DNA of 63,811 bases, the filler included, from Octopus bimaculoides (Eukaryota), in assembly GCF_001194135.2 (NCBI RefSeq). It is 3 parts of 3 records of this genome, joined end to end, with 100 filler letters (N's around TTAATTAATTAA, not from the genome) between each part and the next. Parts side by side here need not be neighbours in the genome. Positions count along the whole stretch, not along the records: positions 1 to 21,037 come from NC_069001.1; 2 more parts are not named here. One strand, 5' to 3'. Position numbers and translations under genes: made by a program. Under the pieces are notes generated by a model. It saw nothing but the letters and a program-made list of their open reading frames with translations. It was not told where the DNA came from and ran no database searches. Positions 16,765 to 17,598 of this stretch are shown here, one piece after another (position 1 is the stretch's first letter; each line of letters begins with the position of its first letter).

Positions 16765-17598
16765 GCTGCCCAAAATGCCAGCACTGATCTCTTGTCACAG
16801 TACACAGTTCTGATCCAAAACATCAAAATTCTTCTGAATTGCATACTTACCTGACCTCTGTCAAATCTCAGTTCTTTTCACGTAGGAGCATTGCTTCAAA
16901 GCGTCAAAACTAGCAACTCTCTGCGGCACACAGATCTGTTTCACAAAGCAGCAACTCACCTCTACATGAGACACAGTACCGTACAAGGTAAGATACACCT
17001 ATAAAATACACTTCTACTTACGGCACAGAGAACGGTTCTATGATATCAAAAATTAACACTTCTCACGTCACACAGAACGATTTCCTAGGCGCCAAAATTC
17101 CCCTTCTTCACATTACAAATATCTGTTTCAAAAAGTCAGTATTTATATTTCCTCGTACCACGCAGAACTTTTTGCAAGCCTCAGATCTCACCCTTTTTTC
17201 ATAGCAAACAAATCTATTCTAATGGTCAAAACTCAAGTCTTCTACTTTATAGCTTACAGATCGATCCCAAAATATCAGTACTTGGTTATCATCACGGTGA
17301 AGTCCACTACTCCAAAATGTCAAAGCTTACTTTTCTTTCTCCGCTCAGTGTAGCGTACCAAAGCATCAAATTACTTGTCCACTTTCGACACATGACATTG
17401 CTCTAAAATTCAGTACAAACCCGTTTTCGCAGCTCACAGAACAGCTCCAAAATGTCTCTACTTACCTCTTGTCACGGCACATATAACTGCGTCAAAATTC
17501 AACATCTTCTCGATACTCAGAACTGTTTTGTAACGTCTCGTCTATGCACACATCTCATCACAGCACAAAAAACTGGTTCATATCCTCAAAACTCACCC
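16765..17598. repeat. Cryptic diverged ~45-bp tandem array, ~18 units
   Basis: TCAAAA-like anchors at 16823, 16904, 16949, 17046, 17092, 17136, 17181, 17226, 17275, 17320, 17366, 17410, 17455, 17499, 17586 (mostly 44-46 bp apart); by-eye consensus CTCTTGTCACGGCACACAGAACTGTTCCAAAATGTCAAAACTCAC. Confidence 0.8.

What the first reader, a model, noticed from the sequence alone, without database searches (positions are those of the whole stretch)
16765..17598. Hidden, deeply diverged 45-bp tandem array (~18 units)
Seen: what looks like unique sequence has a steady 44-46 bp period, with by-eye consensus CTCTTGTCACGGCACACAGAACTGTTCCAAAATGTCAAAACTCAC. Units differ strongly yet the period is largely kept. 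The 45-nt consensus is open in all three plus frames (e.g. LVTAHRTVPKCQNSP), but the ORF track shows no ORF here. Inference: an old minisatellite under length constraint, a decayed 15-aa repeat exon, a protein-binding or nucleosome-related array, or a structured RNA. I know of no description of it.
Basis: partly seen in the sequence, partly recalled or inferred. Interest (0 to 1): 0.7.

Follow-up and report, generated by a model that had tools for sequence, protein, structure and literature searches.

The report
Old, decayed 45-bp minisatellite relic

Summary
Window 16789-17597 (+) holds 18 head-to-tail units of 40-52 nt (mean 44.9), plus a degenerate partial unit at 16745-16788. Lag-45 autocorrelation is 0.389 (z 7.4-7.8), and no shuffle out of 2000 reaches that value at any lag.

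Units share about 54% pairwise identity. There is no neighbour effect, no higher-order repeat and no significant subfamily structure. A simulation of 18 identical units decaying neutrally (about 0.33 substitutions and 0.015-0.02 indels per site) reproduces the conservation, the length spread, the gap count and the autocorrelation. No length constraint is needed.

- **Coding:** not supported. Unit lengths are not multiples of 3, conservation has no 3-base periodicity, and there are no protein or Pfam relatives.
- **Structured RNA:** not supported. Fold z-scores are +1.1 and -0.7, and Rfam finds nothing.
- **Neighbouring elements:** the array is not part of the nearby Tc1/mariner-type transposon or the SINE-like element.

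One mild residue remains. The C-AAAA cores are over-conserved (one C is invariant in 18/18 units) and stop codons are fewer than expected (20 against about 30, P about 0.003-0.02).

No related copy could be reached, because no eukaryotic genome collection was available. Verdict: ordinary relic minisatellite, low interest.

The parts
16789..17597 (+). Array of 18 head-to-tail diverged units of a 45-bp repeat. Unit starts are 16789, 16832, 16872, 16917, 16960, 17012, 17057, 17103, 17147, 17193, 17237, 17286, 17331, 17377, 17421, 17466, 17509 and 17552. Consensus: CTCTTKTCACRGCACACAGAACTGTTCCAAAATGTCAAAACTCAC.
   Evidence: Wrap-around alignment. Autocorrelation. Profile hits only in this interval and only on the + strand. 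Direct-repeat families D3-D5 and D9 all lie within the array; several spacings (45, 135, 360 bp) are exact multiples of 45. GC-skew block.
16745..16788 (+). Degenerate partial unit at the left edge. Only its 3' half, GCTGCCCAAAATGCCAGCACTGAT, still resembles the unit.
   Evidence: Wrap-around alignment. Repeat family D3 begins at 16770.

Best explanation
This is a relic minisatellite in non-coding, repeat-rich eukaryotic DNA.

- **Inferred origin:** a 45-bp seed was amplified to about 18-19 tandem copies by replication slippage or unequal exchange, in essentially one episode.
- **Shown:** homogenisation then stopped. Each unit has since accumulated its own point substitutions (about 0.3 raw, or about 0.4 corrected, per site) and small indels (about 0.015-0.02 per site). 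These include decay of an ancestral CpG and a G/C-to-A/T bias.
- **Inferred present state:** it has no function. It does not encode protein and does not form a structured RNA.

The period is still visible only because indels are rarer than substitutions, not because the length is under selection.
For: **The array is real and single-stranded in register.**

**Star-like decay.**
- Mean pairwise identity is 0.54 and flat with distance between units (0.51-0.55 for 1 to 9 units apart).
- The spread of pairwise identities does not significantly exceed a column-permuted, genealogy-free control (SD 0.082 against 0.073; 9% of permutations reach it).
- The most similar pairs are simply the least-decayed units, at any distance apart.

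**Neutral simulation.** The model was run through the same alignment procedure with 0.33 substitutions and 0.015-0.02 indels per site. It reproduces four observed values:
- mean column conservation 0.68;
- unit-length SD 2.5;
- 1.9 gap events per unit;
- lag-45 identity 0.387.

**Substitution spectrum.** G sites change most (0.44 against 0.26-0.29 for the other bases). C>T and A>T dominate, and Ts/Tv is 0.83. The CG at columns 10-11 now reads CG in 6 units, CA in 5, TG in 1 and TA in 3 (my count from the alignment; column counts).

**No coding signal.**

**No RNA structure or RNA family.**

**Not part of the adjacent transposon.** Similarity to that transposon's relatives ends at about 18416-18430. 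Those relatives' loci carry no such unit.
Against: Three correlated, modest departures from the uniform-rate neutral model remain:
- Column-conservation variance is 0.017 against 0.012 +/- 0.002 (about 2% of simulations reach it).
- One column, C36 in ATGTCAAAA, is invariant in 18/18 units although C>T is the commonest change (4-6% of simulations have an invariant column).
- The + strand has 20 stop trinucleotides. Decay simulations give 30-33 +/- 5 and dinucleotide shuffles give 31.5 +/- 3.6 (P about 0.002-0.02).

The fitted indel-to-substitution ratio (about 0.04-0.06) is at the low end of what I know for neutral animal DNA.

No orthologous or paralogous copy could be examined. Neutrality therefore rests on within-array statistics alone.
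Confidence: 0.75

Rival explanations
1. The array is the internal tandem-repeat region of an unrecognised mobile element, or one locus of a dispersed repeat or satellite family. It would then have been copied here with its flanks rather than born in place.
For: The neighbourhood is full of mobile elements. A SINE-like repeat lies at 16258-16436, about 350 bp upstream. A Tc1/mariner-type element lies at about 18430-19902. From general knowledge, many DNA transposons, Helitrons and SINE tails carry minisatellite-like internal arrays. No search of the source genome was possible.
Against: - There is no second copy of the unit or of the immediate flanks (16437-16788 and 17598-18415) in the 21-kb piece.
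- No terminal inverted or long direct repeats bracket the array, only inverted microsatellites.
- About 62 kb around relatives of the neighbouring transposon has no match to the unit.
- The SINE-like element appears to point its head, not its tail, at the array (orientation read by eye from the consensus; ARAGORN found no tRNA).
- 125 metagenome loci picked by a three-anchor pattern do not match the unit profile.
Confidence: 0.14
2. The array is a functional cis-element array. It would be a row of weakly constrained binding sites (cores CCAAAA and TGTCAAAA, once per 45 bp) for a DNA- or RNA-binding factor. On the minus-strand transcript it would be a row of U1-type 5' splice-site-like motifs (AG|GTRAGT at unit junctions).
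For: - Over-dispersed column conservation and an invariant C36.
- A deficit of substitutions in the C-AAAA cores, seen as a TAA deficit of 7 against 23 expected.
- Five GTRAGT motifs on the minus strand against 0.95 in shuffles.
Against: - All of these signals are borderline (P about 0.002-0.05), correlated with one another and found post hoc.
- The GTRAGT excess follows simply from the motif being part of the repeated consensus.
- Most columns, including the GAACnGTTC palindrome, decay at the average rate.
- Overall decay fits the neutral model.
- No comparative or expression data could be obtained.
Confidence: 0.06
3. The array is a decayed exon that once encoded a 15-residue tandem repeat, for example SCHGTQNCSKMSKLT in unit frame 2.
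For: - The consensus is stop-free in all three + frames.
- Stop-creating substitutions are under-represented (26 against 39.3 +/- 5.3), mostly in one unit frame (6 against 14.5).
- A stop-free run of 105 codons exists.
Against: - Unit lengths of 40-52 nt are mostly not multiples of 3.
- Conservation has no 3-base periodicity (P = 0.62). The third positions of the favoured frame are the most conserved class, the opposite of what coding predicts.
- A 105-codon open run occurs in 23-34% of neutral simulations.
- The consensus peptides share no 5-residue words with 5.8 billion proteins.
- The real ORFs have no hit at E <= 0.01.
- No Pfam hit reaches its cut-off.
- The four HMMER hits have periods of 71, 77, 77 and 18 aa and look like translated unrelated repeats.
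Confidence: 0.03
4. The array is a structured non-coding RNA, or an array of small-RNA precursors.
For: None beyond the regular period.
Against: - Fold energy is no better than shuffles on either strand (z = +1.13 on the + strand, -0.72 on the - strand).
- The + strand has only 12% G, which leaves little pairing potential.
- No Rfam match falls in the array, even at E <= 1. There is none at gathering score anywhere in the piece.
Confidence: 0.02

Closest known systems
Degenerate (ancient) minisatellites in animal genomes
   Same: The unit length falls in the 10-100 bp class. The copies are head-to-tail on one strand and the array is about 0.8 kb. It has strong strand asymmetry in base composition. 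It lies among transposable elements and microsatellites. It has lost homogenisation, so units diverge independently.
   Different: It is more decayed than what tandem-repeat finders normally report (about 54% pairwise identity; TRF is silent). Copy-number polymorphism, the usual operational hallmark of a minisatellite, could not be examined.
Satellite DNA families (long homogenised arrays, often with higher-order repeats)
   Same: Tandem organisation of a short monomer.
   Different: This is a single short array. There is no homogenisation, no higher-order period at the unit level and no second locus in the 21-kb piece. Genome-wide abundance is unknown.
Internal tandem-repeat regions of transposable elements (for example in Helitrons, some DNA transposons and SINE tails)
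   Same: A short-unit tandem array embedded in TE-rich DNA.
   Different: No TE termini bracket it. It lies outside the span of the neighbouring Tc1/mariner-type element and does not accompany that element's relatives. The nearby SINE-like element appears to be oriented away from it.
Coding tandem repeats of 15 residues
   Same: The period is a multiple of 3 and the consensus is open in all three + frames.
   Different: The units are now frame-shifted. There is no codon-position pattern and no protein relative.

Membership tests
Minisatellite (tandem repeat, unit 10-100 bp) | Head-to-tail copies on one strand with a unit of 10-100 bp | tested here: met
   There are 18 units of 40-52 nt, all on the + strand and in register. 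The lag-45 autocorrelation has z = 7.4-7.8.
Minisatellite (tandem repeat, unit 10-100 bp) | Array of roughly 0.1-20 kb at a discrete locus | tested here: met
   The array is 809 bp plus a 44-bp partial unit, sharply bounded by the GC-skew block and the profile hits.
Minisatellite (tandem repeat, unit 10-100 bp) | Copy-number variation between individuals (VNTR behaviour) | not testable with these tools
   Only one haplotype sequence is available. The star-like decay suggests that turnover has ceased.
Satellite DNA family | Long homogenised arrays, with high identity between monomers or a higher-order repeat | tested here: not met
   Mean pairwise identity is 0.54 with a maximum of 0.71. Identity is flat with distance between units, and there is no higher-order repeat.
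Satellite DNA family | Many loci or high abundance in the genome | not testable with these tools
   No eukaryotic genome collection was available. There is no second locus in the 21-kb piece. No match was found in the sampled metagenome loci.
TE-internal tandem repeat | Array enclosed by recognisable element termini (TIRs, LTRs) or an element-encoded ORF | tested here: not met
   No bracketing inverted or direct repeats other than microsatellites. The neighbouring transposon's similarity to its relatives ends at about 18416-18430.
TE-internal tandem repeat | Further copies of array plus flanks elsewhere | tested here: inconclusive
   None was found in the window or in about 62 kb of TE-relative loci. 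The source genome itself could not be searched.
Protein-coding tandem repeat | Reading frame maintained (indels in multiples of 3, long ORF) | tested here: not met
   Unit lengths are 43, 40, 45, 43, 52 and so on. The longest ORF with a start codon is 54 aa.
Protein-coding tandem repeat | Codon-position pattern of conservation | tested here: not met
   Conservation by phase is 0.707, 0.678 and 0.659, permutation P = 0.62.
Protein-coding tandem repeat | Homologous proteins or domains | tested here: not met
   Searches found nothing. One search gave 4 weak hits that are unrelated repeat translations.
Structured RNA / Rfam family | Thermodynamic stability above shuffles, or a covariance-model match | tested here: not met
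   Fold z-scores are +1.13 and -0.72. No Rfam hit falls in the array.

The most novel reading that the evidence does not exclude
The array is not fully neutral. Its two C-AAAA cores (CCAAAA and TGTCAAAA, with one C invariant in all 18 units) would be kept as a phased row of binding sites for a DNA- or RNA-binding factor. That would make it an ancient tandem cis-element array which survived while the rest of each unit decayed.
Probability: 0.05. Interest if true: 0.5.

Novelty: new member of a known kind. Interest (0 to 1): 0.12.

Why it matters
It matters little for biology. Degenerate minisatellites are expected by-products of slippage and unequal exchange in repeat-rich genomes, and this one shows no convincing sign of function.

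It has minor practical value in two ways. It shows that arrays at about 54% unit identity escape TRF and hence standard repeat masking. It also gives a within-locus estimate of the neutral indel-to-substitution ratio (about 0.04-0.06) and of the substitution spectrum for this genome.

Only if the mild over-conservation of the C-AAAA cores were confirmed in orthologous loci would it become an interesting candidate cis-element array.

Tried and rejected
**Repeat finding**
- TRF at minimum score 30 found nothing in the array.

**Search for relatives**
- Exact-product look-ups for three window ORFs found none on record.
- The 3-frame consensus peptide query found no candidate.
- The concatenated real ORFs from 16.6-18.2 kb gave 4184 word-sharing candidates, none with E <= 0.01.
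- The metagenome scan with TCAAAACT x3 at 34-40 nt spacing was too permissive. It returned 120+ loci, and none of the 125 loci held matches the unit profile at E <= 1.
- The full HMMER search with the 54-aa array ORF gave four hits (E 2e-6 to 9e-4). I reject them as homologues. Their periods are 71, 77, 77 and 18 aa. By eye, two look like translated repeat-spacer (CRISPR-like) arrays and one looks like a tail-fibre-type repeat protein.

**Taxon**
- An attempt to name the taxon through the transposase relatives failed. The assembly accession is in no paper of the library.
- The ENA contigs that share the transposon at 84% identity do not share the window's SINE-like element, so they are probably not close relatives.

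**Literature**
- No cephalopod satellite catalogue was found, and no text match to unit or SINE strings.

**Hypotheses rejected**
- Higher-order 180-bp (nucleosome-sized) repeat. Raw lag-180 identity is 0.331, but unit-level identity at 4 units apart is 0.527, no higher than at other distances.
- An origin of the unit from the SINE or the transposon. The profile has no hit there.

**Scripts**
- Searches were a failed script and an empty script and carry no result.

Full report
**1. The observation**

The 45-base period is nevertheless unmistakable.
- Base identity at lag 45 over 16765-17598 is 0.389.
- Mononucleotide shuffles give about 0.27, so z = 7.8. Dinucleotide-preserving shuffles give z = 7.4.
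- None of 2000 shuffles reaches 0.389 at any lag between 10 and 300.
- Five control stretches of the same piece show 0.25-0.27 at lag 45.
- Harmonics appear at lags 90 and 180.

Lengths run from 40 to 52 nt, with mean 44.9 and SD 2.5. A half-recognisable unit lies at 16745-16788.

A profile HMM iterated from the units hits only inside 16791-17593 and only on the + strand. A block of strongly negative GC skew (-0.27 to -0.45) coincides with exactly this interval and returns to about 0 on both sides.

It is stop-free in all three + frames and has stops in all three - frames.

**2. Anatomy of the units**

- Mean pairwise identity between aligned units is 0.54 (range 0.35-0.71). Chance would give about 0.27.
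- Identity does not depend on how far apart two units lie (0.51-0.55 for 1 to 9 units apart).
- The spread of pairwise identities does not significantly exceed a column-permuted control (SD 0.082 against 0.073; 9% of permutations reach it). The most similar pairs are simply the units nearest the consensus, up to 17 units apart.
- There is therefore no higher-order repeat, no recent local duplication and no subfamily structure. The genealogy is close to a star.
- The substitution spectrum relative to the consensus is C>T 44, A>T 43, T>C 23, G>A 22 and so on, with Ts/Tv 0.83. G sites change most often (0.44 per site-unit against 0.26-0.29 for the other bases).
- The CG at consensus columns 10-11 now reads CG in 6 units, CA in 5, TG in 1 and TA in 3 (my count from the alignment). 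This is the classic pattern of CpG decay.

**3. Is a length constraint needed?**

I simulated 18 identical units decaying independently and passed each simulated array through the same alignment and statistics. With about 0.33 substitutions per site and 0.015-0.02 indel events per site, the simulations reproduce four observed values:
- mean column conservation (0.68);
- SD of unit length (observed 2.49; simulated 1.9-2.2 +/- 0.6);
- gap events per unit (observed 1.94; simulated 1.6-1.9);
- lag-45 identity (observed 0.387; simulated 0.36-0.38).

The retained period is thus what neutral decay gives when indels are about twenty times rarer than substitutions. From general knowledge, that ratio is at the low end of what is seen in animal DNA but within it. 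No length constraint is required.

**4. Coding?**

- Unit lengths are mostly not multiples of three.
- Conservation by codon phase is 0.707, 0.678 and 0.659, permutation P = 0.62.
- The longest ORF with a start codon is 54 aa.
- The three consensus peptides, in two consensus variants, share no 5-residue words with any of 5.8 billion proteins.
- The real ORFs in and around the array give no hit at E <= 0.01.
- Pfam gives nothing above cut-off.
- A full HMMER scan of 1.84 billion representatives with the 54-aa ORF returned four weak hits (E 2e-6 to 9e-4). Their internal periods are 71, 77, 77 and 18 residues. Their sequences look to me like translated unrelated repeats: two have alternating constant and variable blocks, and one is a tail-fibre-like repeat protein. 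I do not regard them as relatives.

**5. A residue that the uniform neutral model does not fully absorb**

The + strand of the array has only 20 TAA/TAG/TGA trinucleotides. TAA occurs 7 times against 23 expected from base composition. The expected totals are:
- mononucleotide shuffles: 41 +/- 5;
- dinucleotide shuffles: 31.5 +/- 3.6, of which 0.2% are <= 20;
- decay from the stop-free consensus with the empirical spectrum: 30-33 +/- 5, of which 0.3-2% are <= 20.

Stop-creating single substitutions are fewer than expected (26 against 39.3 +/- 5.3). The deficit falls mostly in one unit frame (6 against 14.5).

This is not a coding signature, for three reasons. That frame's third positions are the most conserved class. 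The units are frame-shifted. And the deficit maps onto two over-conserved cores, C28-AAAA and T35-C36-A37-AAA. C36 is invariant in 18/18 units, although C>T is the commonest change and would not create a stop there.

The same signal shows up as over-dispersed column conservation (0.017 against 0.012 +/- 0.002; about 2% of simulations reach it). It also shows up as an invariant column, which 4-6% of simulations have.

These are correlated, post hoc and borderline signals. Context-dependent mutation rates could produce them. Weak constraint on a CAAAA-type motif cannot be excluded.

**6. RNA**

Neither strand folds better than its shuffles (z = +1.13 and -0.72). The + strand has only 12% G. Rfam gives no match in the array at E <= 1 and none at gathering score anywhere in the piece. 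The nearby sub-threshold miRNA-family matches fall on microsatellites. ARAGORN finds no tRNA.

On the minus strand the unit junction reads AAGAG|GTGAGT, which resembles a 5' splice site. Five units keep GTRAGT, against 0.95 in shuffles. This follows from the motif being part of the repeated consensus and is not independent evidence of function.

**7. Surroundings**

The piece is a gapped draft of a microsatellite-rich eukaryotic genome. It has five large N runs and very long trinucleotide arrays at 13.4-15.4 kb.

Upstream, at 16258-16436, lies one of at least six copies of a ~170-bp dispersed repeat. By eye its reverse strand looks tRNA-derived, although ARAGORN is negative. If that orientation is right, its head and not its tail faces the array.

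Downstream, at about 18430-19902, lies a broken Tc1/mariner-type transposon.
- It has ~119-bp terminal inverted repeats.
- Its C-terminal ORF has relatives at up to 77% identity. Some of these carry DUF4817 or DDE_3 domains or are named Tc1-like or Tc3 transposase in insects.
- Nucleotide similarity to five fetched copies (about 84%) ends at 18416-18425. Those loci contain no match to the 45-bp unit and none of the window's SINE-like repeats.

The array's immediate flanks (16437-16788 and 17598-18415) have no other copy in the piece. No terminal repeats bracket it apart from inverted microsatellites. So within the evidence available the array stands alone.

**8. Relatives elsewhere**

None could be reached. 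The collections on hand hold no eukaryotic genomes. Exact-product look-ups failed. The single metagenome scan returned only chance pattern matches. The literature library has no text match to the unit and no cephalopod satellite catalogue.

The taxon remains unverified. The transposon's named relatives are arthropod proteins, and the closest ones are unnamed.

**9. Explanation and verdict**

The best-supported account is a relic minisatellite.
- A 45-bp seed was amplified by slippage or unequal exchange to about 18-19 copies in essentially one episode. This is inferred from the star-like genealogy.
- Homogenisation then stopped. The units have each drifted about 0.3 raw (about 0.4 multiple-hit-corrected, my calculation) substitutions per site from the ancestor, with occasional small indels.
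- The SINE-like copies in the same piece differ pairwise by 10-30%. The array is therefore probably older than those insertions, unless its founding units were never identical.
- I give this 0.75.

The main rival, at 0.14, is that the array arrived as part of an unrecognised mobile element. That changes its origin but not its nature. A functional cis-element array (0.06), a decayed 15-residue repeat exon (0.03) and a structured RNA (0.02) are progressively less likely.

The thing is real and correctly seen, but it is of an ordinary kind. Interest is low.

Noticed in passing
window 16258-16436; also 1334-1507, 1565-1714, 1767-1901, 2992-3153, 13057-13233: A ~170-180-bp dispersed repeat has at least six copies in 21 kb, 70-90% alike. 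Read by eye on the reverse strand, the consensus looks tRNA-derived, with an A-box-like TGGCAGAATCG and a B-box-like GAGTTCAAATGCC. It is therefore probably the genome's abundant SINE. ARAGORN and Rfam do not call it.
   Followed up: partly
window ~18430-19902 (- strand): A broken Tc1/mariner-type transposon has ~119-bp terminal inverted repeats (18430-18548 and 19785-19902, 80% alike). Its transposase is split over several frames. Its C-terminal ORF (18534-18971) is up to 77% identical to proteins of the DUF4817/DDE_3 kind. The element is about 84% identical in DNA to copies in GCA_013332775.1 and in two ENA assemblies.
   Followed up: yes
window 18501-18650 vs 18891-19040: A 150-bp inverted duplication at 98.7-99% identity lies inside the transposon remnant. 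It is far younger than the rest of the element. It may be an internal rearrangement or a mis-assembly.
   Followed up: no
window 6224-6429 vs 7251-7456: A 206-bp direct duplicate at 98.5% identity lies on either side of the N gap at 6430-7139. It looks like an assembly artefact (collapsed or duplicated haplotype) or a recent tandem duplication.
   Followed up: no
window 13368-15402: There are exceptionally long, impure trinucleotide microsatellites back to back: (GAT)n of about 210 bp, a (CAC/CAT)n block, (TAC)n of about 440 bp and (ATG)n of about 760 bp. They generate the longest 'ORFs' of the piece, which are not genes.
   Followed up: no
window 12141-12407 (- strand): An 88-aa ORF contains ...SPGLDGLLYELY... 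. From memory this resembles the region just upstream of the reverse-transcriptase domain of non-LTR retrotransposons. Pfam gave no hit at E <= 0.01, so this is unverified.
   Followed up: partly
window 16845, 16954, 17016, 17460, 17591 (minus strand of the array): Unit junctions read AG|GTRAGT on the minus strand. One of them is a perfect CAG|GTAAGT. There are five such motifs against about 1 expected from shuffles. The excess is explained by the motif being part of the repeated consensus.
   Followed up: partly
window 16002-16085 and 18334-18434: There are sub-threshold Rfam matches to several miRNA families (mir-297, mir-466, mir-1277 and others; 22-53 bits against gathering scores of 75-101). 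All fall on (TG)n or (CATA)n microsatellites, so they are low-complexity artefacts.
   Followed up: yes
proteins P0143, P0144: Two database 'proteins' that weakly match the array ORF have a 77-residue period of alternating constant and variable blocks. They look like gene calls made across repeat-spacer (CRISPR-like) arrays. This shows that translated repeats in the protein library can give spurious multi-stretch hits.
   Followed up: partly
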